In this document: positions 349 to 17,460 of the stretch, in pieces | Numbering within the stretch: position 1 is the stretch's first letter | How the letters are laid out: the number at the start of each line of letters is the position of its first letter | Program-made: the position numbers and the translations under genes | IMG/VR virus record: IMGVR_UViG_3300047095_000752 | Coordinates: 1-64,000 of that record | Length of the DNA stretch: 64,000 nt | Strand: one strand, 5' to 3' | The notes under the pieces: generated by a model | Told to the model about the DNA's origin: nothing | What the model saw: only the letters and a program-made list of their open reading frames with translations | Databases searched by the model: none

Positions 349-544
349 TTAACATTTCCTTTTTCAGTCGTATTATTCGCCGCGATATAGTTTTATGTTA
401 GATACAAGCGCAATTCTTATAAATATCAATGTTATGCTTTTTGAATATATTGTTGTATTGTAGGTAATATAACCGAACTGGTTGAAGGTTATAACTAAAC
501 TCATTGTCGCGCCTTTCTTTACACTCTTGTTAAAATATATATAG

Positions 545-1084
545 TCAGTATCGTTTCAAGTATTCTGTGAATAAATCTGGCTCGGACATTAGAGTTTGTT
601 TATAATGAATTTCTTGAAATATTTTATCTAATCCTTTAATTGTATTTGGATGTAGTCTCCCCTTCATTTTCTTTATACCATGGGTTTTCAACCAACACCA
701 ATTATAAACTTGTGCCCAGTCTTTCTCTTTACCGTAGGTTCGACTAGCCGCCATCCAATCTGCAACCATTTCTCGTATATATTTTTCGGGCATTTCGATT
801 GGGGTTTCTCGTATGGATACACCTTCGTTACCGTGCCCGGTTCTTGATAGCCAATATTCCCAGTGATGGTGATTATGATTTTGATGATTTAACCACGCGG
901 TTTCCATATCAAGTATATCAAATGATAACATCTGATGTTTTTTACGGTAACAATTAAATTCAACAGGTGTGAATTTACTCCAGTCATGAATTATTAATTG
1001 GTACAATGGTGTTTTTGTATATATAAAACCTGCAAGAAACACATACCATTTATGTTTCAGTAAAAATAGGAAAAACTTTAACAC
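545..1084 (-). CDS. HD-like phosphohydrolase (DUF5662-like)
   Basis: Motifs HKW, HDWSKF, HQNHNHHHWEYW, EMP and EMVADW. Confidence 0.7.
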   Translation of the reverse strand: MLKFFLFLLKHKWYVFLAGFIYTKTPLYQLIIHDWSKFTPVEFNCYRKKHQMLSFDILDMETAWLNHQNHNHHHWEYWLSRTGHGNEGVSIRETPIEMPEKYIREMVADWMAASRTYGKEKDWAQVYNWCWLKTHGIKKMKGRLHPNTIKGLDKIFQEIHYKQTLMSEPDLFTEYLKRY

Positions 1085-1096
1085 TATGAACTCCTT

Positions 1097-1414
1097 TTAG
1101 AATATATATTTACGGAAAAGTCTAATATCATTACGTGCGTGAAACGATTCGCTGTATAAACTTAATGAATTCATCCAATCCACAAAGAATATATGAGTAT
1201 GAGACTTTTTGAAAAATCTACATGTACCTAAACTTGGTGAATCAAATAAAATAGTAGCAAATATTTTTATATTGAATGAAGTGGGGTATTTATATATTAT
1301 GATATCAAGCCCATATCTATTATTTACTACAACGCGGGACTTCATTAATATTTTTGTTATTAATTTTTTAAAACAATATGTTGTATGTACAAATTTTTCT
1401 GGTTGGTATTTCAT
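1097..1414 (-). CDS. Small hypothetical protein
   Basis: 105 aa ORF with an ATGA overlap to the upstream ORF. Confidence 0.5.
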   Translation of the reverse strand: MKYQPEKFVHTTYCFKKLITKILMKSRVVVNNRYGLDIIIYKYPTSFNIKIFATILFDSPSLGTCRFFKKSHTHIFFVDWMNSLSLYSESFHARNDIRLFRKYIF

Positions 1415-1659
1415 GCGGATTTCCGTTTAAGTCTATATAATTCAGTGTATTCACCGATATACCACTTACTCGCACTACACACACCTACCCGCCGTAGTTT
1501 ATCTATTAGATCTTCGGGTCGATCTGATGGGTTGCTGCCACGCCAATGTGACCAGTAAAATACATATAGAATATTAGGTGCCAACCTTTGTATAAAATAT
1601 TCAATTGAATTTAAAATATTGTATATAGTATCGTATATTAATTTTTTGAAACTAACCAT
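1411..1659 (-). CDS. Small hypothetical protein
   Basis: 82 aa ORF in an overlapping chain. Confidence 0.5.
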   Translation of the reverse strand: MVSFKKLIYDTIYNILNSIEYFIQRLAPNILYVFYWSHWRGSNPSDRPEDLIDKLRRVGVCSASKWYIGEYTELYRLKRKSA

Positions 1660-1936
1660 CGTTCACCTTTGTAAACCATATACATTTTACCGTATACTTT
1701 GATGACCGAAGTCGGTCGACTATAAATTCAATTTTACGCCCAACATTATTTCCAAGTTCATCAGAAATGTCCGTTGTATAAAATAAATAAAATAAAGTCT
1801 TCGCAAATTTTAGAATTAATTGTTCAAGACTACAACATAGTTCGTATATAATAACACTGAGTTTATAATTACACTGCGTCATAACTTGTTTTAAACCATA
1901 TACCATCAAAATTTTCGTTATAAGTAGGTATTTCAA
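1652..1936 (-). CDS. Small hypothetical protein (true start probably near 1882)
   Basis: ORF in an overlapping chain; the internal Met in MTQCNYK lies near the stop of the upstream gene. Confidence 0.45.
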   Translation of the reverse strand: MKYLLITKILMVYGLKQVMTQCNYKLSVIIYELCCSLEQLILKFAKTLFYLFYTTDISDELGNNVGRKIEFIVDRLRSSKYTVKCIWFTKVNDG

Positions 1937-3101
1937 TTCTTTTCATAATCTTGAATGTTTCTTCACCTACCGTGTGATCGGTTCGATTACGGTCGTTGAG
2001 TTTACACGTATCTTCATTTAAAATTATAAATGTACATCCTATAGTTACATCTCGATATCTATTCTTCAAATAATTTAAAATGACTCTTCTATTATCTTTT
2101 TTAAGGTTAGTATTACAAACTGCTATTTTATTCCTAAACCCATTTATACTTATTTCGTTATTTATATCTTCAATTAGTAATTGCTCTAATGGTGTATTTT
2201 TCGACAGGCAGTACTCAAATGCTTGTTTGGCGACCTCTTTAGGGTCGTTGAGTATAACTCTTGAGTTTAAATCTGATGATAAATTGTCTTTGAATACTCG
2301 CTCCCGAATTATATCGAATGAAAATATTTTACGGTCAGCCTGAGTTGCTCGGAAATCCTTACCAGATCCGGGTAGACCACAGTAGAACATGATATCTACA
2401 TCGTCCGACGTCAGATTACTTTTAGTATATTTACGTCCGGTGAAATTTATATTAACAACATGTTTAGATTTATGGGAATCGGAGTCTTTGGAAGCTACAC
2501 TTCCCAACTCATCAATTTCTTTGAATAATTTGAATTTATTGTATAGGGAACTCTCATACCTAACCATCTTAGCCAACTTATCGGGTATATTAATTAGATC
2601 GTAGAACACCATATGATTTGACACTAAATCACAAACGTCAACTATAATAGAAGATTGTTTATCGGTATCAACACAGAATTCAGCCAACACATCATACACA
2701 ACATTTGAGGCGTGTTTTGTACTCATAAATGCATGGTTATAGAATGTAACTTTATTATCATCTTTTATTTTTCTGGTAAATACTTTTCCGTAATCGTGAG
2801 TTAAAATTGCAACAGTCATTGTCATCAAATCTTCAACGGATTCAATCTTGATTGTGTTATAACTAAGGTATGCTTTATACGCCCCTAGCATGGCGGTGAC
2901 ATGTGCCCATACATCACCCTCACCGTGCCATGGGTTGTGGTTCACTATAGTTTGACCATCGTATAAATGATGTGAAGTGACTCTCATTTCTTGAACTTCG
3001 GATTCATATTTTTTGCAATAAAAAGAAATTATTTTATTCATATATTTTATGTTTTGTGCGTTTGATGTTGCCACGAAAAACTCCTTAAAGGTTGGATACA
3101 C
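1869..3101 (-). CDS. HD-Pnk-like RNA end-healing enzyme (HD phosphoesterase plus P-loop kinase)
   Basis: HGEGDVWAH...HDYGK...H...HM HD motifs, followed by Walker A GLPGSGKD, a SFDIIR motif and an NTN..K..R kinase-type motif. Confidence 0.8.
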   Translation of the reverse strand: MYPTFKEFFVATSNAQNIKYMNKIISFYCKKYESEVQEMRVTSHHLYDGQTIVNHNPWHGEGDVWAHVTAMLGAYKAYLSYNTIKIESVEDLMTMTVAILTHDYGKVFTRKIKDDNKVTFYNHAFMSTKHASNVVYDVLAEFCVDTDKQSSIIVDVCDLVSNHMVFYDLINIPDKLAKMVRYESSLYNKFKLFKEIDELGSVASKDSDSHKSKHVVNINFTGRKYTKSNLTSDDVDIMFYCGLPGSGKDFRATQADRKIFSFDIIRERVFKDNLSSDLNSRVILNDPKEVAKQAFEYCLSKNTPLEQLLIEDINNEISINGFRNKIAVCNTNLKKDNRRVILNYLKNRYRDVTIGCTFIILNEDTCKLNDRNRTDHTVGEETFKIMKRIEIPTYNENFDGIWFKTSYDAV

Positions 3102-3119
3102 TATTCAATATATATAATG

Positions 3120-4433
3120 CTAATGAGATTCCGTTTGTTCACCAGATCGAATTATGTAAAATACTGATATCAATTTAAATATTTTTCGCATCAAATGTGT
3201 CTTATTGGTTACTGGATCTATATGTTCATATAAGTCATTTTCCAAAGAGCGAACCACAATTCCTTCCCGACCTTTGAATTGATTCTTGTTCAACATACTA
3301 TGGTGCACTAAGGTGGTCGGACCATCTACATATTCTTCAAGGACACCTTCGTAGTACGGACCTTTATATAGACACTTCACACATGGTAAATTAAATGCTT
3401 TTGTATACGATTCTAATATATCGATGTGTTGATATTTACCATTAATTGTAATATCGAAGAATTTATATTCTTTAGCTGTACAACCATAATTCATATCTTG
3501 AACGCCGTTACCATATATTTCACCATATAGAACAATGTCATCACCCCCAGATCCGCCATGTCCCTGTGATATAGATTCTGCGAATCCCCTATTATTATTC
3601 CTAAGATTATACAATAGATCTTTAACTCGTGAATCTAATATCGGTAGTAAATATAGATCGACGTATGGTGTTTCGGCTATGTTAAAAATAGTATTGAAAT
3701 AGGGCACATTATTATATAGAGAATTTATAATTTTACTTTTCCAGCAGTTATTAAATATATTGGTATGGTATTTGAATAAGGTTTTCTTTTTAAATTTTAC
3801 ACTGAATTCTCTAACAATCTTTAACTGAGTGGTATGACTTCCTGCAACAAATTCAAATTTACCTTTAGGGTTCTTAACATACCCCGCCCGGAAGTTTGTA
3901 CCGTGTATTTTCTCAGTTATATAAATCGTTTCACCTCCACTAAAAGCTCCGGGATAATTTCTATAATTTTCAATACCAGTGTAATTCGTGAACGTACCAT
4001 ATTGATTTACGATATACACATTAGAGTCGTACCCAGCAGTTTCATAATTATATGCGTTATAATATTTAGTTTTATCATCACCTACCTTGTCACCGGCTTC
4101 AATGTGTATGGCAAATCCAAAACTGGGTTCCGCCCTTATATTCGCCGCCATTATTCTAACGTGTGTATCAGCCATAACATGCCCCGAAGGGAGTGTCCCA
4201 CAATATTTGGTTATCTCCCATTTATCCGTCCATTCTCTTGGGACTAGACTGTTCGGTGGGAAATATATAATTGGATCATTTACTTTATACTTACCTTTTG
4301 GTACAATTACCCACCACCCATTGATTCGGATCTTCTCTAATAAATCCGCATTTGGGTGTTTTTGTACATCTGATATAGTTTCTACTTTTACAGCAAAAGT
4401 TGACATGAAGTTCCTTTCTTTACCGATATCCAT
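3120..4433 (-). CDS. RNA ligase, DRB0094/Rnl5 family (start probably near 4406)
   Basis: N-terminal HPNADLLE OB-type module, motif I TEKIHGTN, YGEIYG, FFDI, EGIVVR and the C-terminal KIFK. Confidence 0.88.
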   Translation of the reverse strand: MDIGKERNFMSTFAVKVETISDVQKHPNADLLEKIRINGWWVIVPKGKYKVNDPIIYFPPNSLVPREWTDKWEITKYCGTLPSGHVMADTHVRIMAANIRAEPSFGFAIHIEAGDKVGDDKTKYYNAYNYETAGYDSNVYIVNQYGTFTNYTGIENYRNYPGAFSGGETIYITEKIHGTNFRAGYVKNPKGKFEFVAGSHTTQLKIVREFSVKFKKKTLFKYHTNIFNNCWKSKIINSLYNNVPYFNTIFNIAETPYVDLYLLPILDSRVKDLLYNLRNNNRGFAESISQGHGGSGGDDIVLYGEIYGNGVQDMNYGCTAKEYKFFDITINGKYQHIDILESYTKAFNLPCVKCLYKGPYYEGVLEEYVDGPTTLVHHSMLNKNQFKGREGIVVRSLENDLYEHIDPVTNKTHLMRKIFKLISVFYIIRSGEQTESH

Positions 4434-4783: not shown

Positions 4784-6988
4784 TTACAACGTTTTATCGA
4801 CTACACCAACAGAACTCATTCCGAGAAATGCAGCCACATACTTGAGTCTAGTCTCATGCCGATTATTCAAGAATGCATCTAATATTATTTTAGAGCATTC
4901 AAATTCTTGAATAGCAAGTCCACGCTTTTTAGCGACTTGGCGATGTGTTATATTTTTGAAATATTCTTCATTTTCATATAGAGGGAGTCCGTAAGTCAAA
5001 TTTAAATACTTATGTCCCCGGACTTTAAGAGCGGGTTGGATATAATATCCGGATGGTAATACACTTGAAAAATTATTCAATGGTTTATATACAAACCCTT
5101 CGAGTAAAGGTAGATCTGGATATGTATTGAAGGTAAGAGTTTCAGAAGGAGAACTACCGCAACGAGAGAGCCAGTCCAGTGTATTGTTTGCCATATCGTG
5201 TTCATCCGTTATAACGGTATATTTGCATGGCTTTAGTATTTTACAATCATCTGATATGATATCTATGTATTTCATCATATCCAAATTAGACATTGTATAA
5301 CCGTGTATAAGAGATCTTTTATGCTTGGTACCGATAGCAAGTACATGAAATGGTCGAATTTCAATATCAGTTTCTTTAGTAAATTCGTTGAGTGTATTCA
5401 ACACGGTCTCAACATACGCCGTATCCTTACCAGAATGTATATTGGATAGATATTGGGATTCGATTGCTGCGTAGAATTGCTCGTTAAGCATTGTTTTTGC
5501 AGCGTACGACCAAGGTAGAAGCTCAGCATCCAGAATAATAAAGGACACTTCCATCCCGATTTTTTCTTCAAGGGCGCTTATATTTTTTGATATTTCTGAA
5601 TGTAGGACGAGCTTTATATTTTGTTCATCTTCATTCTTGAAAAATTCAAATCCACCACGAGAATTTATTATAAGGGTTTTATCGTACCCTTTTTCTTGAG
5701 CAGCTTCAAAATTCTTAAACCACAATATTTGAGTTCGAGAACCCATATACTTAGTCTGTTGAATTAATTTAGTTACGCCACGCTCTCTGTAGTATTTAAA
5801 CGCACCCAGAGGATGTTCAATATAAGAGTCGAATTGTCCGTATAAAGTTCTATAATAGTCGAGTTTATTTTCTGGAAGTAGATGCTCCTTAAGAGTCTCA
5901 ACCGGAGACACTGTAGGTGCCATGTAAAATATATTCTTCGAGTTACTTATGAATGCACGTGACGTATACCCACGCCCAATTTCCTTCTGAGATACAGAGT
6001 AATCAGACACAGGGAGGTATATGTTACCTTGCATTTTATTCAAATTTTTAAGAGATTTAAAGTCGATCTGTCGTTCAATTTTATTTTTTCGAGGTTTTCT
6101 ATAATCGGTTGTGTCAAGAGTCCATTCGAGAATTCGCTCAGGACTCCATTCGGTTGGATCAACTTGTATTGAAAATATCCTATCTTCAACTTCACCTTCT
6201 TTTGGCGGATATGGTTTTGATATTGTTATCTTGTTATCTATAAGAGATTTATGTGTAGCGAATATACAGAAGGAGGGCTGCATATTCTCAAATTCTTCAG
6301 TCGGTTCTATTATATCAATATATTCAATATTGTATAAGTCGGATAGATAACTAACCACTTCGCGGCTAAATTGGTCTTTTGTGTATTCGACGCAATGGTC
6401 TCGCCGACGGAGGCTACCCGGCTCTATCGAATAGAATTTATTGAATTCAATATTAGGGGTAGTTAGATATAAATACTTCGGTACAAATATGTTTTTAATT
6501 AAATCTAAAATTTTAATACGATCACCATATTCAAAGTGCTCAATAGCTTCCACACAAGTCAATAGATCGGGGAGACAATCGCTTATAGTTATATTTGGGT
6601 ATAGTATATTACTTTCAATTACACGAACTTTATCAGTTGTTTTTATCTTTTTTATTTTATAAAAATCCTTTTCAATTCCAAGGATTCTAAGTTTCGGATG
6701 TTCTTTTACCAACATCTCCAACAGTTTACCTTCGGAAGTACACAGGTCCACCATGTACTCAATTTCAGGCATATCATTGAGTTTATTACATATCAATTCA
6801 TGTCTTTTCTGATGTAACGATATCTTCTTATCAACCAGTTCAGCTACAGATACTGGTGGGGTATATCCAAATTCTTGCTTAAATTTTTGCTTTAATGTTT
6901 TGTTATCTTGACAGAATTTGTTCATAATCATAGAGAAGTTTTTAGAATATCTTCTAACCGTAGTTGAATCGTTATCCGACATCTTCAT
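4784..6988 (-). CDS. Fusion of Hen1 RNA 2'-O-methyltransferase domain and Pnkp adenylyltransferase (RNA ligase) domain
   Basis: Hen1 MTase motifs DLCTSEG, VEAIEH, TTPNIEFN and RRDHCVEYT. Pnkp-ligase motifs YMAPTVSP, IEHP..AF.YY, KYMGSR, LDAELLPW, EGFVYKP, QPALKVRG..YL..TYG, KR.LA..EF and terminal DKTL. Confidence 0.85.
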   Translation of the reverse strand: MKMSDNDSTTVRRYSKNFSMIMNKFCQDNKTLKQKFKQEFGYTPPVSVAELVDKKISLHQKRHELICNKLNDMPEIEYMVDLCTSEGKLLEMLVKEHPKLRILGIEKDFYKIKKIKTTDKVRVIESNILYPNITISDCLPDLLTCVEAIEHFEYGDRIKILDLIKNIFVPKYLYLTTPNIEFNKFYSIEPGSLRRRDHCVEYTKDQFSREVVSYLSDLYNIEYIDIIEPTEEFENMQPSFCIFATHKSLIDNKITISKPYPPKEGEVEDRIFSIQVDPTEWSPERILEWTLDTTDYRKPRKNKIERQIDFKSLKNLNKMQGNIYLPVSDYSVSQKEIGRGYTSRAFISNSKNIFYMAPTVSPVETLKEHLLPENKLDYYRTLYGQFDSYIEHPLGAFKYYRERGVTKLIQQTKYMGSRTQILWFKNFEAAQEKGYDKTLIINSRGGFEFFKNEDEQNIKLVLHSEISKNISALEEKIGMEVSFIILDAELLPWSYAAKTMLNEQFYAAIESQYLSNIHSGKDTAYVETVLNTLNEFTKETDIEIRPFHVLAIGTKHKRSLIHGYTMSNLDMMKYIDIISDDCKILKPCKYTVITDEHDMANNTLDWLSRCGSSPSETLTFNTYPDLPLLEGFVYKPLNNFSSVLPSGYYIQPALKVRGHKYLNLTYGLPLYENEEYFKNITHRQVAKKRGLAIQEFECSKIILDAFLNNRHETRLKYVAAFLGMSSVGVVDKTL

Positions 6989-7610
6989 TTCCTTCGTCGA
7001 GCCAAGTTTTAGAGATTGTAATTAATTTATCAACAAATGCTTCATGTGCTGTATATATTCCACCGCGCCGGATAGTCAAAAATAACGATAATACATATGC
7101 CTTCTGTATGAATTCCGATGTCGTCATAGCTTCTTTTGGATTTAATTTCAACATAAAGCACGAACGCATTTCAATCGTCGATTCAACACTTGATGCATTA
7201 ATGTTGTAATCATCAAATAGCTTTACCGAGAATTCTAAGTCGTTCACAATCGGACCAATTATTATTTCTTGATTTTGCGTTTTTTGAAAAAATTGTTCGT
7301 CGGTTATATCACCTTTCGGTGGTCGTCCCGCGATGCAAGACCGTAGGGTTTCCCATAGTGCTTTTAGATGATACGGACATGCTGCAGCAACTTCTGAATT
7401 CAAATAGAAATCTAAATTCAATTGTCGTGCAACTTTTAAGAATTGCATATCATCTAATTCGGTTTTAATTTCATATTGCGTATCTACCCCGTTGACGAAT
7501 TGACCCGTGAATTTAAGTCCACGCAGGTCCTGTTCAAATGGGGGAGAATTTGGATTCTTAACTAATATATAAGATAAATGTGGTATATCACTTTTTATTG
7601 AAAAATACAT
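6972..7610 (-). CDS. Hen1 N-terminal (ligase-activating, Hen1_L-like) domain
   Basis: LSYILVKNP resembles DLGYLLHKHP; AYVL...VDKL....WL matches the end of the Hen1 N-domain; it lies directly upstream of the Hen1 MTase. Confidence 0.72.
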   Translation of the reverse strand: MYFSIKSDIPHLSYILVKNPNSPPFEQDLRGLKFTGQFVNGVDTQYEIKTELDDMQFLKVARQLNLDFYLNSEVAAACPYHLKALWETLRSCIAGRPPKGDITDEQFFQKTQNQEIIIGPIVNDLEFSVKLFDDYNINASSVESTIEMRSCFMLKLNPKEAMTTSEFIQKAYVLSLFLTIRRGGIYTAHEAFVDKLITISKTWLDEGNEDVG

Positions 7611-12855: not shown

Positions 12856-13494
12856 TTAAAGTCCACGGCTCATAATATCACTTAAACGTTTGTAGCAAGT
12901 GATTGTAGTCTTAACATCATCCAACGCACTGTGTGCATTTTCATTCACTACACCACAAAATTGAGCTATTGTTCCTAATTGATTATTTTCCAGAGTTTTA
13001 TAATGCCTCTGTTCGGTTTGGAATTTTAATTCATTTATCGGTCGAATCCAGTTTGTAAAGTCCATAGCTTTCCAACGTAAATCTATAGTCTGTCGCAATA
13101 AATGTCGATTAAACAAAGACTTCTCCGGAGTTCGATCAAAGTCTAGAAATGGCTCCATAAACTTTGTATCAAACCCATAGTAGTTTTGACCGAATGGATC
13201 TATAATTTGACAGACCGGAGAAATCTTTTTAATCCAATCTACAAACAAATCTCGAACTACACTTTGGGGTGGATATTGAGTTAACATCTCAGGTGTAATT
13301 TTTGTTACGTTTTGAGCTTCTTGGGTGAATCTATCTGGATACTGGATAGAAATGTAATGTTGAAATATATCTTCAGTTGCGTTGAAATTTTCATCTACTC
13401 TTATAGCTGCAATTTGAAATATTTCGTTATATCCAGCTTTTAATCCTGTTGTTTCGAAATCAATACATACAAGAGGTATATTTAAATCTGACAT
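12856..13494 (-). CDS. DEDDh 3'-5' exonuclease (DnaQ/epsilon-like)
   Basis: DFETTG, QNYYGFD and HSALDD motifs. Confidence 0.88.
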   Translation of the reverse strand: MSDLNIPLVCIDFETTGLKAGYNEIFQIAAIRVDENFNATEDIFQHYISIQYPDRFTQEAQNVTKITPEMLTQYPPQSVVRDLFVDWIKKISPVCQIIDPFGQNYYGFDTKFMEPFLDFDRTPEKSLFNRHLLRQTIDLRWKAMDFTNWIRPINELKFQTEQRHYKTLENNQLGTIAQFCGVVNENAHSALDDVKTTITCYKRLSDIMSRGL

Positions 13495-13571
13495 TTACGG
13501 TGGTCCTTTTGGTTGTAATATTTATATATAAAAAAATAACCTAATCTTTTGGATTTGGTTATTGAATTTGT

Positions 13572-13647
13572 TGGTACGAACGGTGTGAATCGAACACACG
13601 ACTCAGAGTATATAAGACTCCGCTTCTCACCACTGAATTACGTTCGC
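13572..13647 (-). tRNA. tRNA-Ile(UAU)
   Basis: Cloverleaf GCGAACG...GGAGT-CT TAT AT-ACTCT...GTGTG TTCGATT CACAC CGTTCGT ACCA. Confidence 0.88.
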
Positions 13648-13690
13648 ATAAAAATAGGTGGGGAGGCTATCCTTTATGACAGACTCCCCA

Positions 13691-13767
13691 TGGTGATCGC
13701 GGTGGAATTCGAATCCACACTGTAAGATTTTTAAGATCTTTGCCTCGACCAGTTGGGCTACGCGACC
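13691..13767 (-). tRNA. tRNA-Leu(UAA) with a short variable loop
   Basis: GGTCGCG...AAGAT-CT TAA AA-ATCTT ACAGT GTGGA TTCGAAT TCCAC CGCGATC ACCA. Confidence 0.85.
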
Positions 13768-13786
13768 ATTATTAAACTTTCTAAAA

Positions 13787-13860
13787 TAACCCGACAGGAC
13801 TTTCACCTGCAGTTCGTAACCATTTAGTAGGAGTGTGTTTAATATTTTCACCACGGGTTA
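13787..13860 (-). ncRNA. tRNA-like element with an unpaired anticodon arm (pseudo-tRNA)
   Basis: Acceptor stem TAACCCG/CGGGTTA and T arm GCAGG-TGAAAGT-CCTGT are intact; no anticodon stem; no CCA. Confidence 0.5.
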
Positions 13861-13864
13861 TTCT

Positions 13865-13937
13865 TGAGAATGACTGGATTTGAACCAGCGACACGACGAT
13901 GACTTTCGTCTGCTCTACCAGACTGAGCTACAATCTC
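13865..13937 (-). ncRNA. tRNA-like element with an aberrant 6-nt anticodon loop
   Basis: GAGATTG TA GCTC..GAGC A GACGA-AAGTCA-TCGTC GTGTC GCTGG TTCAAAT CCAGT CATTCTC. Confidence 0.65.
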
Positions 13938-13973
13938 AATAGTTTTAATAGAGAATTAACTCTATGTTTTTGA

Positions 13974-14048
13974 TGGCTCTAGGGATTCGAGTCGAACGAA
14001 TAACGGGGAATTTAACAGATTCCTGCTCTCCCATTGAGCTACCCTAGA
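13974..14048 (-). tRNA. tRNA-Asn(GUU)
   Basis: TCTAGGG...GGAAT-CT GTT AA-ATTCC...CCCTAGA GCCA. Confidence 0.9.
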
Positions 14049-14058
14049 AAAGTTTTAT

Positions 14059-14760
14059 TCAAATATGAGACCACGTTTTTCTTTGAATTATTTTTTTAAT
14101 GTTATTATCGCTAACATTAAACATTTCACCTAATTTAACATAATTCTTTATTTCTGGGTATAACTTACGTATTTCTAATACTTGTTGTTTGGTGAGTTTG
14201 TTTGATATATAATTTGGATTGCCTTTTCTAGAGATTTTTTCTTTCGGCGGTATAGGTTCCCAGTGTAAATGTTTCCATCTTCTATTGTTAACAACTTCAC
14301 ATATAGTGCGTTGACCGACACCAAATAATTTACTTAATTTTTTCTGTGATATGTTATTGTTATTGTATATTTTTCTTATTTCTAATACTTGGTTATCGGT
14401 TAATCTAGAGCTTTTGCTATCTATACCTACGGCGTGGGTAATTAAATTATTTTTATGCGCATGTGTATTATTTTCTTTGACCGTACACCATTCTAGATTT
14501 TTGAGATCATTATTTGATTTATTACAATCCATATGATTTACAACGGCATCTTCGAACCAAGAGTCTGGATTAAAAGCGAACATTAGTAACCGATGGACCC
14601 GTAATTTTCTTCTTTTTGGTTTTAATGCTAAATGAACTGTATAATATCCACTATCTAAACTTGCTTTAACAAATTTACCACTATCATTATTCCGAACTCG
14701 ACCTAAATTACTAATAGAATATTTATCGGTTAAATGACAATCTCTCCAAATTTCTTCCAT
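14059..14760 (-). mobile_element. Free-standing NUMOD4-HNH homing endonuclease within the tRNA cluster
   Basis: EIWR...YSISNLGRVR, VHRL, VNHMDCNKSNN...NLEW...EN..HA, and two SxLTxxQVLEIRKxY HTH-like repeats. Confidence 0.88.
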
Positions 14761-14789
14761 ATATGATCCAATGCTACAATAAAAAATAA

Positions 14790-14866
14790 TGGTGCCAACA
14801 ACTGGATTTAAACCAGTAACTTACGATTTAGAAGATCGTTTCTCTATTCAATTGAGATATGCTGGC
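14790..14866 (-). tRNA. tRNA-Arg(UCU)
   Basis: GCCAGCA...ACGAT-CT TCT AA-ATCGT...TGTTGGC ACCA. Confidence 0.88.
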
Positions 14867-14881
14867 ATAGAAAACTTAAAA

Positions 14882-14958
14882 AGATATGGTGGTATGAATT
14901 ACACATACCGTCACACGGACCCGATGTCCGGTGTTTTATCCTTAAACTAACCATATCT
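14882..14958 (-). ncRNA. tRNA-like element with extended acceptor stem, 6-bp T stem and non-canonical anticodon loop
   Basis: AGATATGGT/ACCATATCT; D arm GTTT..AAAC; CGGAC-ATCGG-GTCCG; GGTATG-TGTAATT-CATACC. Confidence 0.55.
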
Positions 14959-14964
14959 AAAATT

Positions 14965-15042
14965 TGGAGCAGCGCCACTGACTTGCACAATGGATCATCC
15001 AACTGGAGTGCTGGATGGTTTTACTATTAAACTACGATCTGC
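14965..15042 (-). ncRNA. tRNA-like element ending in CCA, with long anticodon stem and 6-bp T stem
   Basis: GCAG..CG/CGCTGC TCCA; D arm GTTT..AAAC; ATCCAGC-ACTCCA-GTTGGAT; CCATTG-TGCAAGT-CAGTGG. Confidence 0.55.
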
Positions 15043-15059
15043 ATTGTAGATTCAATTGT

Positions 15060-15470
15060 TTCGGTCCCTGAAGACTTCTGGACCGACTTCACCATATGAC
15101 CGGGTAACTACGATGTCGGTATGTTAGCGACTCCGTCTACGCGACCGTCTTCGTGTGTATAAATAGTAGCATACCTCAAAAGCCCAAGTCAAGAGGTTTC
15201 TAAAATTTCACTTACACTGGTGAATCCGAACTGAGTTATAAATGGGAAAAAGCATCCGAAACCCGTTTACACACACTCAGCCATAATTTATAAGAGTACC
15301 GGTAAACGCAAGGCATTTACATCCCCGGTACTCCAAACCAAGCCACGTAGCTCAGTAAAGTCAAATAAAACATCGGGTATACCATAAAGTATACCCGATG
15401 GCTTCGCACCGATAGGGTACGAAAAATCCCACCAAGCCCACATGCGCTCCATGATGTTTATGATGGGATC
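15060..15470. ncRNA. Hairpin-dense non-coding tract, candidate ncRNA(s)
   Basis: Stems tcggtcc/ggaccga, ctgagt/actcag, gagtaccgg/ccggtactc and catcgggtatac/gtatacccgatg; no ORF in the track. Confidence 0.45.
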
Positions 15471-15475
15471 AAAAA

Positions 15476-15640
15476 GGTACCCGGATATCGGATTTGAACC
15501 GACGATCCACCTCTATCTATAGTTCGAGGTGACCCCTAGCTTCTATCAACACCTCATGTGACTAGCAAGGGTGTCTTCAAGATTCTTGTCTGACGTTCGG
15601 GAAGTCACTCCTTATATCAGACTCCTTTAGGACCGGGATA
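15476..15640 (-). ncRNA. Expanded tRNA-like RNA of about 165 nt
   Basis: Canonical T arm GTCGG-TTCAAAT-CCGAT; acceptor CCCGG/CCGGG; extra hairpins GTCTGA/TCAGAC and CACCTC/GAGGTG; directly below a motif A promoter. Confidence 0.55.
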
Positions 15641-15660
15641 GTTTAAACTTAAACTGTATA

Positions 15661-15680
15661 CAATATTTAATATATATAAT
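15661..15680 (-). promoter_or_regulatory. Phage promoter motif A driving the tRNA cluster
   Basis: caatatttaatatatataat. Confidence 0.7.
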
Positions 15681-15681
15681 A

Positions 15682-16263
15682 CTAAGCTCGTAAAGAAGCT
15701 ACACTAGCACTCATACTAGCGTATGCCGAGCGGGTTCCAACAGATGTAGGATCGTACTGTACAGTGTTATGAGTTTTGATCCCAAGACCACTACCAACGG
15801 CAAATGCGTCGATATTTGCGCCGGAGAAAATAAATTGCCAGTTGTATACTTCTTCTTGATGTGTGATTTTATTTTTAATATCATTCAATGTGAAATGACG
15901 ACTTGCATTTTCGTCACCATCTGTAATAATACAAATGATAACTTTTTCAGGTCTCTCTGGTTCCGGTAGTTTATTCAAATATACACCAATGTGATCTACA
16001 GTCTTTCCAATAGCATCGAATAAAGCTGTATACCCATTAGGTTGATAATTTTCTTTACTTAATAGTTCACAACTATTTAGATTTTCTACTTCACCGATAT
16101 CAACTTGAGTATCAAATATAGTTTTAATAATTTGAGCGGTTCCGGGTATTTTTCTTTGATCTTCAATAAGTGAATTATACCCGCCAATCGCATCATCTGT
16201 TAAAGAATGCATTGATCCGGACTTATCAACAATCATTCCAATTAGAGTATGGTCTTTCTTCAT
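15682..16263 (-). CDS. VWA-domain protein
   Basis: MIDAS motif DKSGSM, TALFDAIG, ITDGDENAS and WQFIFSGAN. Confidence 0.88.
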   Translation of the reverse strand: MKKDHTLIGMIVDKSGSMHSLTDDAIGGYNSLIEDQRKIPGTAQIIKTIFDTQVDIGEVENLNSCELLSKENYQPNGYTALFDAIGKTVDHIGVYLNKLPEPERPEKVIICIITDGDENASRHFTLNDIKNKITHQEEVYNWQFIFSGANIDAFAVGSGLGIKTHNTVQYDPTSVGTRSAYASMSASVASLRA

Positions 16264-16448
16264 TGTGTTGTTCCTTGTGTGTTTTGTTGTTAGTTGCTTA
16301 TATGGATTGTATCACATGATTTGTAGATTTGCAAGTGGATTAAAATAACTTTACTATAATTTTCATTATTATTTACTACAAAAAAGAATGGCTTTGCTAG
16401 AGCCATTCTTCCAACCATTCTTTCTAACCTAACTATACAACCGGCGAA

Positions 16449-16610
16449 CTACAACCGGCGACCCTTCTCCAGCGCCTTCTCCAGTTCTTTTTCGCGATTA
16501 GACCCCCATTTTTCCTCCCTCAAATTCCTGCAAAAGGCGTCGCGCTGCGCCTTTTCTTCGTCCCGCCGCTGTTCGTTCCGCGCCTTTTCTTCATCTGCAC
16601 GCTCTGACAT
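16449..16610 (-). CDS. 53-aa highly charged GC-rich peptide (absent from the ORF track)
   Basis: MSERADEEKARNEQRRDEEKAQRDAFCRNLREEKWGSNREKELEKALEKGRRL; sits between a motif A promoter and a terminator-like hairpin. Confidence 0.55.
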   Translation of the reverse strand: MSERADEEKARNEQRRDEEKAQRDAFCRNLREEKWGSNREKELEKALEKGRRL

Positions 16611-16685
16611 TTTTATACCCTTTCATCGTTTGTTTATAATATCTCAGTTCACATGAGCCGAGGATATCGAATAACTTCATGATAG

Positions 16686-16705
16686 CACTAATTAATATAT
16701 ATAAT
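16686..16705 (-). promoter_or_regulatory. Phage promoter motif A (variant)
   Basis: cactaattaatatatataat. Confidence 0.6.
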
Positions 16706-16744
16706 TAAATACTATATAATATAAACTAAAAATAGATCAAAAAA

Positions 16745-16779
16745 TAAACCATTATAACTTGTTAGGTTATAATGGTTTA
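16745..16779 (-). terminator. Terminator after the second tRNA-Ile
   Basis: taaaccattataac-ttgttag-gttataatggttta with an A-run to the left. Confidence 0.65.
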
Positions 16780-16786
16780 CGAGTAT

Positions 16787-16862
16787 TGGTAGACCGTGTA
16801 AGAATTGAACTTACGACTCCGTGTATATAAGACGCGGCTTCTAACCACTGAATTAACGGTCC
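16787..16862 (-). tRNA. tRNA-Ile(UAU), second diverged copy
   Basis: GGACCGT...CGCGT-CT TAT AT-ACACG...GTAAG TTCAATT CTTAC ACGGTCT ACCA. Confidence 0.85.
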
Positions 16863-16874
16863 ATCGAATGGTTG

Positions 16875-17460
16875 TAAAACCCTGAGTGCTATCCGGCGAA
16901 GGCTAGCACTCAGGGGGTCTGACTACACATTCCTATGCACTGGGAGTCGCACATAGGTCTTTCGTAGGAGCCCTCGCCAAAGAGCCTACTAGTGTAGAAA
17001 TATCATAGCCCGGTGAGTAGGCGGGGATAGACGCTACTCACCGGGTGGTGCTCTTGGACTTAGTCTGTGTGGACTTAGTCACTGAGCAAGATTTTAAAGA
17101 CTTTCGTCTTGAGTTGAAATTTACGACTTCTTGAAATCTTAGAGAAGTCGTAGTATCGTATACCATCTCGTGCACCGTCGAATCCAAAGGGCTGCATTCC
17201 CCTTTGCGGAAGGATTCGATGGTATGGTGATTTCCGGAACACTGTTCCGCGATACCGTTGTGTGGATTCGCGTGGAGTCAGTCACGCTGGTAGTGCGGCT
17301 GGGGGACAGCCGATGAGGGGAAAAGAAAGTCCAGCCAAGGAGTTATGTGCAGGGCTTTGGCAAACCCTTTGGGAGACTCCTTGGCTGGATAATTAAAAAG
17401 CTTCAACCCAGACAATGACTCTGAACCCAAGTGGAAGGAAATGGGTTATGCGACCAGAAT
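16875..17460. ncRNA. Large, highly structured non-coding element of about 600 nt
   Basis: GC-rich, no ORF in the track, many long stems: cctgagtgcta/tagcactcagg, cccggtgagtag/ctactcaccggg, tacgacttct/agaagtcgta, tcgaatcc/ggattcga, tccagccaaggagt/actccttggctgga. Confidence 0.6.

What the first reader, a model, noticed from the sequence alone, without database searches (positions are those of the whole stretch)
13787..15042. Four aberrant tRNA-like genes interleaved with real tRNAs, all altered in the anticodon arm
Seen: 13787-13860, 13865-13937, 14882-14958 and 14965-15042 keep recognisable acceptor, D and T arms but have non-decoding anticodon arms (unpaired; 6-nt AAGUCA loop; 5-nt AUCGG loop; 6-nt ACUCCA loop on a 7-bp stem). 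The last two also share GUUU/AAAC D stems and 6-bp T stems. Damage concentrated in the anticodon arm while other stems stay paired is not what random decay predicts. Inference: these are tRNA mimics acting as decoys for anticodon nucleases, synthetases or uncharged-tRNA sensors, fitting the RNA-repair genes nearby.
Basis: partly seen in the sequence, partly recalled or inferred. Interest (0 to 1): 0.75.

Follow-up and report, generated by a model that had tools for sequence, protein, structure and literature searches.

The report
Conserved non-decoding tRNA mimics in phage
A freshwater jumbo phage carries, between its real tRNA genes, four tRNA-shaped RNA genes whose anticodon loops cannot read codons in the normal way but whose stems are preserved by selection, so they look like working tRNA mimics of unknown use rather than dead genes.

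Summary
The four elements exist at the stated coordinates, on the minus strand, in one tRNA operon of a 245-kb lake phage. I call them A (13785-13862), B (13865-13937), C (14882-14958) and D (14965-15042). B is a perfect tRNA body (Rfam 48.7 bits) with a 6-nt loop AAGUCA. A scores 25.8 bits once its arm is skipped, C 18.8 bits, D nothing. A, C and D also lack canonical T and D loops. Three independent assemblies are identical, so these are not assembly errors. A and B recur in two diverged relatives, and D in two. Every substitution in their stems keeps pairing (B five compensatory pairs, A three, D one). The loop of B varies (AAGUCA, AAGCCA, AAUGCCA, AAUGUCA) and never has U33. A descends from tRNA-Leu; B from a phage tRNA-Ile(GAU)-type gene. 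Real neighbours encode CCA; A, B and C do not. So random decay is excluded for A and B and unlikely for D; C is open. Function is untested. A role as decoys for tRNA-directed nucleases is plausible: the phage has a Hen1-methylase/Pnkp-ligase repair cassette, and a bacterial rtcB operon carries a similar tetraloop tRNA mimic. A role in transcript processing is a serious rival.

The parts
14965..15042 (-). D: tRNA-shaped RNA, 78 nt. 4-bp acceptor plus mismatches, GUUU/AAAC D stem, 7-8-bp 'anticodon' stem with the 6-nt loop ACUCCA, 6-bp T stem with loop UGCAAGU, encoded UCCA 3' end.
   Evidence: Sequence and fold. No Rfam tRNA hit. Present in L003 and in a wastewater relative, absent from L005. 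All 22 pairs are kept in 3 lineages, with A52-U66 to G-C compensatory and U53.G65 to U-A.
14882..14958 (-). C: tRNA-shaped RNA, 77 nt. 8-9-bp acceptor, GUUU/AAAC D stem with GG in the D loop, GC-rich arm CGGAC-AUCGG-GUCCG, 6-bp T stem with loop UGUAAUU, no CCA.
   Evidence: (z -3.8). Rfam tRNA 18.8 bits, E 0.11. The L003 copy differs only at two T-loop bases. Absent from L005.
13865..13937 (-). B: complete tRNA body (canonical D arm with GG, T loop UUCAAAU, A73) with a 5-bp anticodon stem closing the 6-nt loop AAGUCA. No U33, no CCA.
   Evidence: Rfam 48.7 bits; ARAGORN 'tRNA-??? (gt)'. Orthologues in L003 (loop AAUGCCA), L005 (AAGCCA) and a wastewater relative (AAUGUCA). 5 compensatory pairs, 96.8% of cells paired. 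Nearest cultured-phage sequences are tRNA-Ile(GAU) with the same anticodon stem.
13785..13862 (-). A: tRNA-shaped RNA. 9-bp closing stem, 3-bp D-like stem with an A/U loop, mostly unpaired 'anticodon' region, 5-bp T stem with loop UGAAAGU, no CCA. It starts 2-4 nt after B.
   Evidence: Rfam tRNA 25.8 bits with the arm skipped. Identical in L003. In L005, 21 of 78 bases differ, yet all 17 acceptor/D/T pairs are kept, 3 by double changes. A covariance model of A hits the neighbouring type-II tRNA-Leu.
14790..14866 (-). Real tRNA-Arg(UCU), CCA encoded.
13974..14048 (-). Real tRNA-Asn(GUU), CCA encoded.
13691..13767 (-). tRNA with anticodon UAA ('Leu') but a short variable arm, CCA encoded. It replaces the 87-nt type-II tRNA-Leu of the relatives.
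13572..13647 (-). Real tRNA-Ile(UAU), CCA encoded. Followed by a hairpin plus U run (about 13530-13565) that ends the operon.
   Evidence: The hairpin is conserved in L003 and L005.
14059..14760 (-). HNH/NUMOD4 homing endonuclease inserted between tRNA-Arg and tRNA-Asn.
   Evidence: Pfam PF07463, PF13392. Absent at this place in L003 and L005.
15163..15192 (-). Sigma-70-like promoter (TTGACT, 18 nt, TACTAT, with TG) upstream of a conserved leader of about 110 nt (15043-15155) and of D.
   Evidence: Conserved in L003 and L005.
15475..15643 (-). ncRNA-1: conserved structured RNA of about 165 nt. A terminal stem and a canonical T arm (loop UUCAAAU) sit at its 3' end. This is a fifth tRNA-like feature.
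   Evidence: 11 compensatory pairs between the window and L005. ARAGORN relaxed call at 15479-15570. Same layout as T4 rnaC.
15371..15400 (-). Strong intrinsic terminator (13-bp stem plus U run) ending the ncRNA-1 unit.
4784..6988 (-). 734-aa protein: Hen1-type 2'-O-methyltransferase domain (about residues 46-236) fused to a Pnkp-type RNA ligase domain (about 346-510).
6972..7610 (-). 212-aa Hen1 N-terminal domain protein. In bacterial systems this domain activates the Pnkp ligase.
   Evidence: Pfam PF22032. Conserved in the relatives.
3120..4433 (-). RNA ligase, 437 aa.
   Evidence: PHROG 968, Pfam PF09414, TIGR02306.

Best explanation
A, B, C and D are tRNA-derived small RNAs that have given up normal decoding but are kept for their tRNA-like shape.

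Origin. A is a diverged copy of tRNA-Leu. B derives from a phage tRNA-Ile(GAU)-type gene. The ancestry of C and D is unclear.

Expression (inferred). They lie on the same strand and in the same unit as the phage's real tRNAs, downstream of a conserved sigma-70-like promoter, so they should be co-transcribed. Host tRNA-processing enzymes would presumably cut them out. Their acceptor/T-arm 'top half' is what RNase P, RNase Z and the CCA-adding enzyme recognise; that statement is established tRNA biology, not tested here.

Selection (shown). Selection keeps the acceptor, D and T helices. The anticodon loop is non-canonical: it has no U33 and is 5-6 nt long, or the arm is open. In B the loop changes quickly between relatives.

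Mechanism (inferred). The most likely mode of action is tRNA mimicry in trans. The RNAs would occupy a protein that binds the tRNA body, with a host tRNA-directed defence nuclease as the best candidate. They would be neither decodable nor, probably, cleavable, and so would spare real tRNAs. This would complement the phage's own tRNA-repair enzymes (Hen1-methylase/Pnkp-ligase fusion, Hen1_N, Rnl).

Shown: existence, non-canonical loops, conservation, compensatory evolution, lack of encoded CCA in A, B and C, ancestry of A and B, and the repair-gene context.
Inferred: transcription, processing, stability, the partner protein and the decoy effect.
For: 1. Real and reproducible. Identical in three independent assemblies. 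B scores 48.7 bits as tRNA.
2. Selection on structure.
- B has 5 pairs with changes on both sides among 3 lineages and 96.8% of cells paired; only 2 of 500 shuffles reach this.
- A differs at 21 of 78 bases between the window and L005, yet all 17 acceptor/D/T pairs survive. The chance of that under random substitution is 4.7e-4.
- D keeps all 22 pairs in 3 lineages, with one compensatory pair.
- Between the window and L003, A, C and D are 100%, 97% and 97% identical. The flanking genes are 82-88% identical.
3. Non-decoding. B loops are AAGUCA, AAGCCA, AAUGCCA and AAUGUCA. All have A at positions 32 and 33 and CA at the 3' end. The acceptor identity is inconsistent: G3.U70 occurs only in L005. 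A in L005 has loop UGACAAA with G33.
4. Real neighbours encode CCA; A, B and C do not, in any lineage.
5. Ancestry. The covariance model of A hits tRNA-Leu. B aligns with phage tRNA-Ile(GAU) and shares its anticodon stem.
6. Conflict context. The repair cassette is conserved in the relatives.
7. Independent parallel. A bacterial tRNA mimic has a perfect body, CCA and a 4-nt 'anticodon' loop. It lies directly downstream of rtcB, with rtcR divergent.
8. [quoted passage not shown]
Against: - There is no direct evidence of stable RNAs. The two metatranscriptome contigs cover most of D and the upstream non-coding region, but they run across a predicted promoter and a terminator, and DNA carry-over is not excluded.
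- No partner protein or host is known.
- Many anticodon nucleases read the anticodon loop itself, which these RNAs lack, so they would not bait such enzymes.
- C and D are absent from the most distant relative, and the evidence for C is thin.
- Only three or four lineages exist, so the covariation statistics are weak. For A the shuffle test gives 64 of 500.
- The repair genes are 6-10 kb away, not adjacent.
- A, C and D have lost the T-loop and D-loop bases that make the tRNA elbow, so their three-dimensional mimicry is uncertain.
Confidence: 0.38

Rival explanations
1. Cis-acting processing or punctuation elements. The tRNA-shaped folds would serve only as entry and cleavage sites for RNase P, RNase Z and exonucleases. 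They would shape and protect the polycistronic precursor, as partners do in T4 dimeric tRNA precursors and as in mitochondrial tRNA punctuation. They would have no role after cleavage.
For: - They sit in tandem pairs 2-7 nt from a neighbour: D-C-Arg and Asn-B-A-Leu.
- What is conserved in A is exactly the acceptor/T 'top half', while its anticodon arm drifts.
- They lie in one promoter-to-terminator unit.
- A conserved leader and a conserved hairpin spacer suggest an elaborately processed transcript.
Against: - B keeps a complete, invariant D arm, T arm and a covarying anticodon stem. That is far more than a cleavage signal needs.
- Real tRNAs already supply RNase P sites every 80-100 nt.
- D keeps a fully conserved 7-8-bp arm and an encoded CCA.
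Confidence: 0.2
2. Pseudogenes. These would be dead duplicates of tRNA genes that look conserved only because the relatives are close, or because the tRNA cassette was exchanged recently.
For: - C and D are known only from close relatives and are missing in L005.
- L003 carries a further degenerate element X (19.2 bits), and tRNA genes in this cluster are swapped between lineages. The region therefore turns over fast.
- A, C and D score below the tRNA threshold.
- Spacers in the cluster are also well conserved.
Against: - For A and B, every stem substitution preserves pairing across lineages whose flanking genes are 68-78% identical.
- D shows a compensatory pair.
- The derived T loop of A (UGARAGU) is shared by the diverged lineages, so the stems were maintained after decoding features were lost.
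Confidence: 0.14
3. Unusual but working decoders. These would be nuclease-resistant tRNAs with altered anticodon loops. Alternatively they would be frameshift or suppressor tRNAs: B with a 6-nt loop as a doublet decoder, D read with an 8-nt loop (as ARAGORN draws it) as a quadruplet decoder.
For: - Phage tRNAs are known to carry anticodon-loop changes that evade host nucleases (PMC10264068).
- The tRNA-Ile(GAU) genes of cultured T4-like phages that are closest to B already have C33.
- The L003 and wastewater versions of B have 7-nt loops that ARAGORN reads as UGC or UGU.
- ARAGORN offers 2- and 4-base anticodons for B and D.
Against: - The 'anticodon' of B changes between relatives (GU, GC, UGC, UGU) without matching identity changes.
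- U33 and a purine at position 37 are missing in every version.
- A, B and C lack the CCA that all real neighbours encode.
- A has no paired anticodon arm in the window.
Confidence: 0.1
4. RNA subunit or regulator of a phage protein. Candidates are the repair enzymes (Hen1/Pnkp-ligase, Rnl) or the adjacent VWA-like protein. The model is Y RNAs, whose tRNA-like module works within a Ro60 particle in RNA-repair operons.
For: - tRNA-like RNAs accompany RNA-repair genes in bacteria: YrlA (PMC4201824, PMC7790460), and the rtcB-linked mimic found here.
- The 193-aa VWA-like gene borders the tRNA/ncRNA cluster in all relatives, including the distant L002.
Against: - No TROVE/Ro60 gene in the 245-kb record.
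- The YrlA model scores only 20-30 bits against a threshold of 69, and those hits span two adjacent tRNA genes.
- The repair genes are not adjacent.
Confidence: 0.1

Closest known systems
Phage T4 stable RNAs rnaC (species 1) and rnaD (species 2) in the tRNA gene cluster
   Same: Both are non-tRNA small RNA genes packed head-to-tail with tRNA genes in a phage tRNA operon. Both sit beside tRNA-Arg and a homing endonuclease: segB in T4, an HNH enzyme here. T4 rnaC ends in a canonical T arm plus a terminal stem, like ncRNA-1 here. Their function is still unknown (PMC3014915).
   Different: No sequence similarity; only chance matches of 14 nt or less. The T4 RNAs are 119-139 nt and are not cloverleaves. 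A-D are 73-78 nt with four-arm tRNA geometry.
Bacterial Y RNAs with a tRNA-like domain (YrlA, Rfam RF02553; D. radiodurans Yrn1)
   Same: Both are tRNA mimicry by a non-decoding RNA linked to RNA-repair genes. Yrn1 is described as having a 5-bp 'anticodon' stem with a 6-nt loop (PMC4201824). Competitive inhibition of an anticodon nuclease has been proposed for YrlA (PMC7790460).
   Different: There is no Ro60/TROVE gene and no Ro-binding stem. The YrlA model scores far below its threshold. In YrlA the tRNA-like module is permuted within a larger RNA, whereas here the RNAs are stand-alone cloverleaves in a tRNA operon.
Phage tRNAs with anticodon-loop substitutions that evade host tRNA nucleases (PMC10264068; PARIS and retron cases PMC11464382, PMC11555353)
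   Same: Both are phage-encoded, tRNA-derived genes in which change is concentrated in the anticodon loop, in a setting of conflict over tRNA.
   Different: Those tRNAs keep a 7-nt loop and a fixed anticodon, and they replace the cleaved host tRNA in translation. B has 6- or 7-nt loops without U33 or R37 and no stable anticodon. A has no arm.
rtcB-linked tetraloop tRNA mimic found here (L023 181-254; homologue L022 339-412)
   Same: It has the same D arm and T loop as B, a perfect tRNA body and a deliberately short anticodon arm. It is physically linked to an RNA-repair ligase operon, rtcB with divergent rtcR.
   Different: It is bacterial, encodes CCA and has a 4-nt loop on a 4-5-bp stem. It is not an orthologue of B. 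It was not found in 400 other genomes of its class. I know of no description of it.

Membership tests
Canonical tRNA (Rfam RF00005) | Covariance-model score at or above the gathering score (29 bits) | tested here: inconclusive
   Result is mixed: met by B, not met by A, C or D. B 48.7 bits, met. A 25.8, C 18.8, D no hit, not met.
Canonical tRNA (Rfam RF00005) | 7-nt anticodon loop with U33 and a purine at 37, on a 5-bp stem | tested here: not met
   A has an open arm (3 of 5 pairs). B has the 6-nt loop AAGUCA. C has a 5-nt loop, or a 7-nt loop with A33. D has a 6-nt loop on 7-8 bp. The 7-nt orthologues of B still have A33 and C37.
Canonical tRNA (Rfam RF00005) | Elbow nucleotides: D-loop G18 G19 and T loop UUCRANY | tested here: inconclusive
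   Result is mixed: met by B only. C has the GG but T loop UGUAAUU. A (UGAAAGU, no GG) and D (UGCAAGU, no GG) do not meet it.
Canonical tRNA (Rfam RF00005) | Aminoacylation and use on the ribosome | not testable with these tools
   Indirect only. A, B and C lack the CCA that every real tRNA of this cluster encodes. The acceptor identity of B is not conserved.
YrlA / bacterial Y RNA (RF02553) | Covariance-model score at or above the gathering score (69 bits) | tested here: not met
   20 bits in the window, 30.4 in L003 and 21.9 in L005. In the window and L003 the hit spans the 3' part of tRNA-Asn plus the 5' part of B; in L005 it is a partial model match over the same junction.
YrlA / bacterial Y RNA (RF02553) | Encoded next to, and bound by, a Ro60 (TROVE) protein | tested here: not met
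   No PF05731 match in the 245-kb record. The record is estimated 78% complete, so absence is not proven.
T4 rnaC / rnaD stable RNAs | Sequence homology to T4 rnaC or rnaD | tested here: not met
   blastn-short gives only matches of 14 nt or less, at chance level.
T4 rnaC / rnaD stable RNAs | Non-tRNA stable RNA gene inside a phage tRNA operon | tested here: inconclusive
   The position is met. Stability as RNA is not shown: only two metatranscriptome contigs, one of which covers most of D.
Nuclease-evading phage tRNAs (anticodon-loop variants) | A decoding-competent tRNA with a conserved anticodon and substitutions only at loop positions contacted by the nuclease | tested here: not met
   The anticodon of B is not conserved (GU, GC, UGC, UGU), the loop length varies and U33 is absent.
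tmRNA and other curated tRNA mimics in Rfam 15 (all 4227 families were scanned) | A match to the family model | tested here: not met
   ARAGORN finds no tmRNA. No Rfam family other than tRNA reaches its threshold in 13400-17200, even when listing hits up to E=10.

The most novel reading that the evidence does not exclude
The phage maintains a small, fast-evolving repertoire of 'anticodon-disarmed' tRNA mimics as RNA-based anti-defence factors. They would be processed like tRNAs and would bind host tRNA-directed nucleases or sensors through the tRNA body, but offer no cleavable or decodable loop. The loop of B would toggle between 6 and 7 nt in an arms race with those enzymes. Together with the rtcB-linked tetraloop mimic seen in bacteria, this would define a general class: stand-alone tRNA decoys that partner RNA-repair systems.
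Probability: 0.25. Interest if true: 0.85.

Novelty: new variant of a known kind. Interest (0 to 1): 0.62.

Why it matters
tRNA cleavage is now recognised as a major bacterial anti-phage strategy. Examples include PrrC, RloC, PARIS, retron effectors, OLD, Schlafen-type nucleases and Cas12a3.

The known phage answers are RNA repair and replacement tRNAs. An RNA that mimics tRNA purely to soak up or blind such enzymes would be a third answer. It would parallel phage-encoded RNA mimics of antitoxins and of CRISPR repeats (that parallel is from my own knowledge).

It would also give a testable function to the 'pseudo' or 'undetermined' tRNA calls that are routinely discarded in phage annotation. 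It might shed light on the half-century-old puzzle of the non-tRNA stable RNAs in the T4 tRNA cluster.

Even if the decoy idea fails, the covariation shows that tRNA gene duplicates can be retained for shape alone.

Tried and rejected
1. Closer relatives in the phage collection. megablast and blastn of the region found only HNH-gene hits, and generic tRNA similarity for B. The records that carried no annotation under the hit turned out to be ordinary tRNA-Ile(GAU) genes that were simply not annotated; the D69 hit is an annotated tRNA that ARAGORN reads as Phe.

2. Pattern scans. Three scans of IMG/VR and two of the JGI metagenomes, using patterns for A and B, found nothing beyond the hidden own record. 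The clade is rare. Relatives came only through exact-protein look-ups.

3. Genome scans with B's D arm and T loop. I set the spacer to 17-24 nt, whereas a normal tRNA needs 25. The scans therefore selected short anticodon arms. They say nothing about how often such arms occur, and they could not find a normal bacterial counterpart of B.

4. Y RNA reading. Rejected: no TROVE gene and sub-threshold model hits that bridge two genes.

5. Homology to T4 rnaC or rnaD. Rejected.

6. Relaxed ARAGORN calls as evidence. Rejected after the shuffle control.

7. 'B mimics a wobble-excised, religated tRNA' (the RloC product, PMC2610378). Against the AAUGUCA and AAUGCCA versions, the missing base is position 34. 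Against a more distant AAGAUCA variant, and against the tRNA-Ile(GAU) ancestor, it is position 35. The reading depends on the alignment, so I keep it only as speculation.

8. Anti-Shine-Dalgarno motif ACUCC in A and D. It is not conserved in the L005 copy of A, so I dropped it.

9. Wider distribution of the rtcB-linked mimic. Not found in 400 sampled genomes of its class.
Full report
SETTING

The window is the first 64 kb of a 245-kb IMG/VR virus record, 35% G+C and estimated 78% complete. Sequencing runs that hold it are lake-water metagenomes.

The tRNA genes all lie on the minus strand. Read 5' to 3' on that strand, the region contains:
- a 193-aa VWA-like gene (16263-15682);
- about 640 nt without any conserved reading frame (15681-15043);
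- D (15042-14965) and C (14958-14882);
- tRNA-Arg(UCU);
- an HNH/NUMOD4 homing endonuclease gene (14760-14059);
- tRNA-Asn(GUU);
- B (13937-13865) and A (13862-13785);
- a tRNA with anticodon UAA, then tRNA-Ile(UAU);
- a hairpin with a U run;
- an RNase T-like exonuclease gene.

A sigma-70-like promoter (TTGACT, 18 nt, TACTAT) lies at 15192-15163. A strong terminator lies at 15400-15371. D to tRNA-Ile therefore most simply form one transcription unit.

CHECKING THE OBSERVATION

- B has a textbook acceptor stem (one U.U mismatch), D arm (with GG) and T arm (UUCAAAU), and A73. Its 5-bp anticodon stem closes a 6-nt loop AAGUCA. Rfam scores it 48.7 bits as tRNA. ARAGORN reports 'tRNA-???' with a two-base anticodon.
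- A has a 9-bp closing stem, a 3-bp D-like stem, a 5-bp T stem with loop UGAAAGU, and an 'anticodon' region in which only 3 of 5 pairs can form. Searched alone, it scores 25.8 bits against the tRNA model, with the arm skipped.
- C scores 18.8 bits (E 0.11) and D nothing. Both fold as cloverleaves with the shared GUUU/AAAC D stem and 6-bp T stems. C folds far better than shuffled sequence (z -3.8).

1. Only in B is the defect confined to the anticodon arm. A, C and D have also lost the canonical T loop. A and D have lost the D-loop GG. D's acceptor has four clean pairs.
2. Detection of A, C and D by relaxed tRNA finders means nothing by itself. The same settings give 127 and 54 calls in this genome, against 102 and 40 in shuffled sequence.

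The stretch 13495-15681 is base-for-base identical in three assemblies from other samples. The odd loops are therefore not assembly errors.

RELATIVES

The pattern and BLAST searches found no kin. Exact-protein look-ups of the flanking VWA-like and RNase T-like proteins did.

Flanking-gene DNA identity to the window:

| Relative | VWA-like gene | RNase T-like gene |
|---|---|---|
| L003 | 82% | 88% |
| L005 | 68% | 78% |

Laying contigs of other runs on the region revealed a further close relative in a wastewater library. It covers A, B, D and part of C.

Distribution of the elements:
- The B-A pair is present at the same place in L003 and L005.
- D and C are present in L003, with an extra degenerate tRNA-like element X between them (19.2 bits). 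They are absent from L005.

EVIDENCE FOR SELECTION

B:
- The D arm, T arm and variable loop are invariant in three lineages.
- All variation lies in the acceptor stem, the anticodon stem and the loop.
- Five pairs change on both sides (for example GACGA/UCGUC to GGGGA/UCCCC). 96.8% of cells are paired, and 2 of 500 shuffles reach this.
- The chance that eight random substitutions spare every pair is 0.017 for each of two lineage comparisons.

A:
- The window and L005 differ at 21 of 78 positions. Eleven of the differences lie in the 'anticodon' region.
- All 17 acceptor, D and T pairs survive, three through double changes. The probability under random substitution is 4.7e-4.
- The wastewater relative turns A's G.U pair into A-U, and turns B's U.U mismatch into U.G.

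D:
- All 22 pairs are kept in three lineages. One pair changes from A-U to G-C and one from U.G to U-A. The other three differences fall in unpaired positions.

C:
- It differs from its L003 copy only at two T-loop bases.

Between the window and L003, A, C and D are 100%, 97% and 97% identical, which is more than the flanking genes.

Conclusion: random decay is excluded for A and B and unlikely for D. C is undecided.

THE LOOPS

B's loop reads AAGUCA (window), AAUGUCA (wastewater relative), AAUGCCA (L003) and AAGCCA (L005). Its length changed at least twice among four lineages. The frame AA...CA is constant, and U33 and a purine at 37 are never present.

The acceptor stem carries the alanine determinant G3.U70 only in L005. 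There is therefore no consistent amino-acid identity.

In L005 the arm of A is a clean CCCC/GGGG stem with loop UGACAAA, which has G33. In the window it is open.

All real tRNAs of the window encode CCA. A, B and C do not, in any lineage; D does.

These features argue against ordinary decoding.

ANCESTRY

A covariance model built from A finds, besides A itself, the neighbouring type-II tRNA-Leu(UAA) of L003 and L005 (25.8 bits, E 8e-5). A has the same T stem as that tRNA, and a T loop changed from UUCAAGU to UGAAAGU. A is thus a diverged copy of tRNA-Leu.

B is most similar to the tRNA-Ile(GAU) genes of cultured T4-like phages (81-82% identity). It shares their anticodon stem GACGA/UCGUC. Their loop is CCGAUAA.

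CONTEXT

Upstream on the same strand, and conserved in the relatives, lie:
- an RNA ligase (3120-4433);
- a 734-aa protein that joins a Hen1-type 2'-O-methyltransferase domain to a Pnkp-type ligase domain (4784-6988);
- a separate Hen1 N-terminal domain protein (6972-7610);
- a protein with a weak match to CCA-adding enzymes (1869-3101).

In bacteria the Pnkp/Hen1 system reseals ribotoxin-cut tRNA and methylates the junction so that it cannot be cut again (established knowledge of that system). The phage therefore evidently meets tRNA cleavage.

By accident I also found an independent parallel. A scan that was biased towards short anticodon arms hit two homologous bacterial loci. Each carries a perfect tRNA body with CCA but a 4-nt 'anticodon' loop, followed by a second tRNA-like gene with an aberrant loop. 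In one locus the pair lies directly downstream of rtcB, with rtcR divergent.

The literature offers several relevant points:
- YrlA and Yrn1 are tRNA-mimicking RNAs of repair operons. Yrn1 has a 6-nt 'anticodon' loop (PMC4201824).
- Competitive inhibition of an anticodon nuclease by such a mimic has been proposed explicitly (PMC7790460).
- Phage tRNAs with altered anticodon loops evade nucleases (PMC10264068).
- The T4 tRNA cluster holds two stable RNAs of unknown role (PMC3014915). Its layout resembles this one: tRNAs, a homing endonuclease, tRNA-Arg, rnaD, rnaC.

WHAT IT MOST LIKELY IS

These are tRNA-derived RNAs kept for shape, not decoding. I favour trans-acting tRNA mimicry directed at a tRNA-binding protein of the host's defence (confidence about 0.4).

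The reasons:
- B retains every element of the L-shape.
- The loop is the fastest-changing part.
- The phage is otherwise equipped for a fight over tRNA.

The main rival is a purely cis role in maturing the polycistronic precursor (0.2). That fits A, whose conserved part is the acceptor/T 'top half'. It does not explain B's intact D arm and covarying anticodon stem.

The other readings:
- Pseudogenes: 0.14, chiefly C and the element X in L003.
- Unusual decoders: 0.1.
- An RNA partner for a phage protein: 0.1.

Expression is essentially untested. Two rRNA-depleted metatranscriptome contigs match 14975-15268 (most of D) and 15312-15581 exactly, and nothing covers the rest of the 2.2 kb. However, they cross a predicted promoter and a terminator, and DNA carry-over cannot be excluded.

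MEMBERSHIP AND NOVELTY

- B passes the tRNA model but fails the loop criteria. A, C and D fail the model.
- None is a Y RNA: there is no TROVE gene, and the model scores 20-30 bits against 69.
- None is homologous to T4 rnaC or rnaD.
- No other Rfam family matches.

I class this as a new variant of a known kind, namely non-decoding tRNA mimics. The function is unproven and the covariation support is good but rests on few lineages.

Noticed in passing
window 15475-15643 (-): ncRNA-1 is a structured RNA of about 165 nt behind a conserved A/T-rich promoter-like block. It has 11 compensatory pairs between the window and L005. It ends in a canonical T arm (loop UUCAAAU) plus a terminal stem, the same layout as T4 rnaC. 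No Rfam family matches.
   Followed up: partly
window 15043-15470 (-): Further non-coding modules are conserved in L003 and L005. One lies before the terminator at 15400-15371. Another is a leader of about 110 nt between the promoter at 15192-15163 and D; in L005 this leader is followed directly by tRNA-Asn. L003 and L005 share an extra module of about 130 nt that the window lacks. Two metatranscriptome contigs fall exactly in this non-coding stretch.
   Followed up: partly
window 4784-7610 (-): The bacterial Pnkp/Hen1 repair system is rearranged here. The Hen1 methyltransferase domain is fused to the Pnkp ligase domain in one 734-aa protein. The Hen1 N-terminal domain is a separate 212-aa protein. 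No kinase or phosphatase domain was detected in either. The arrangement is conserved in the relatives.
   Followed up: partly
window 13691-13767, 13974-14048, 14790-14866 (-) versus L003 11611-12069 and L005 10805-11830: tRNA genes are swapped like cassettes between conserved flanks. The window's Arg and Asn genes, which flank the HNH endonuclease gene, are not orthologous to those of L003 and L005. That pattern suggests co-conversion during homing. The 87-nt type-II tRNA-Leu(UAA) of the relatives is replaced in the window by a 77-nt short-variable-arm tRNA with the same anticodon. Which synthetase charges it is unclear.
   Followed up: no
L023 105-254 (-) with rtcB at 392-1630 (-) and rtcR at 1859-3088 (+); homologue L022 339-485 (+): These are bacterial tRNA mimics in an RNA-repair operon. 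The first has a perfect tRNA body with CCA but a 4-nt 'anticodon' loop (AUAA or AGAU). The second is a tRNA-like gene whose loop differs between the two genomes (called UUA versus UAG; the L022 copy has A33). Rfam calls both tRNA. The mimic was not found in 400 other genomes of the class.
   Followed up: partly
L003 11440-11511 (+): An extra tRNA-like element X lies between D and C in the relative L003. It has a canonical T arm, a CCA end and a degenerate 5' half, and scores 19.2 bits as tRNA. It is absent from the window.
   Followed up: no
L029 1494-1569 and L030 1494-1569 (Aeromonas phage Aswh_1, Enterobacter phage vB_EluP_RZH): The tRNA-Ile(GAU) genes of these cultured T4-like phages have the loop CCGAUAA, that is C33 in place of the near-universal U33. 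They are not annotated in the deposited records.
   Followed up: no
window 13944-13966 (-): A hairpin (AUAGAG-UUAAUU-CUCUAU) in the spacer between tRNA-Asn and B is conserved in all three lineages, even though the Asn gene itself differs. It could be a processing or protein-binding site.
   Followed up: no
window 15682-16263 (-); L002 6001-6582: The 193-aa VWA-like (YegL-like) protein borders the tRNA/ncRNA cluster in every close relative. It also does so in a distant one (40% identity), where it follows 17 tRNA genes. Another distant relative (L001) has it without tRNAs nearby.
   Followed up: no
L019 745-813 (+); L020 5296-5368 (-); L018 6685-6759 (-): Other metagenome-assembled genomes hold tRNA genes with B-like D and T arms and aberrant anticodon arms: one arm cut to 12 nt, one 8-nt loop, and one loop with G33. 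The scan that found them was biased towards short arms, so nothing can be said about how frequent they are.
   Followed up: no
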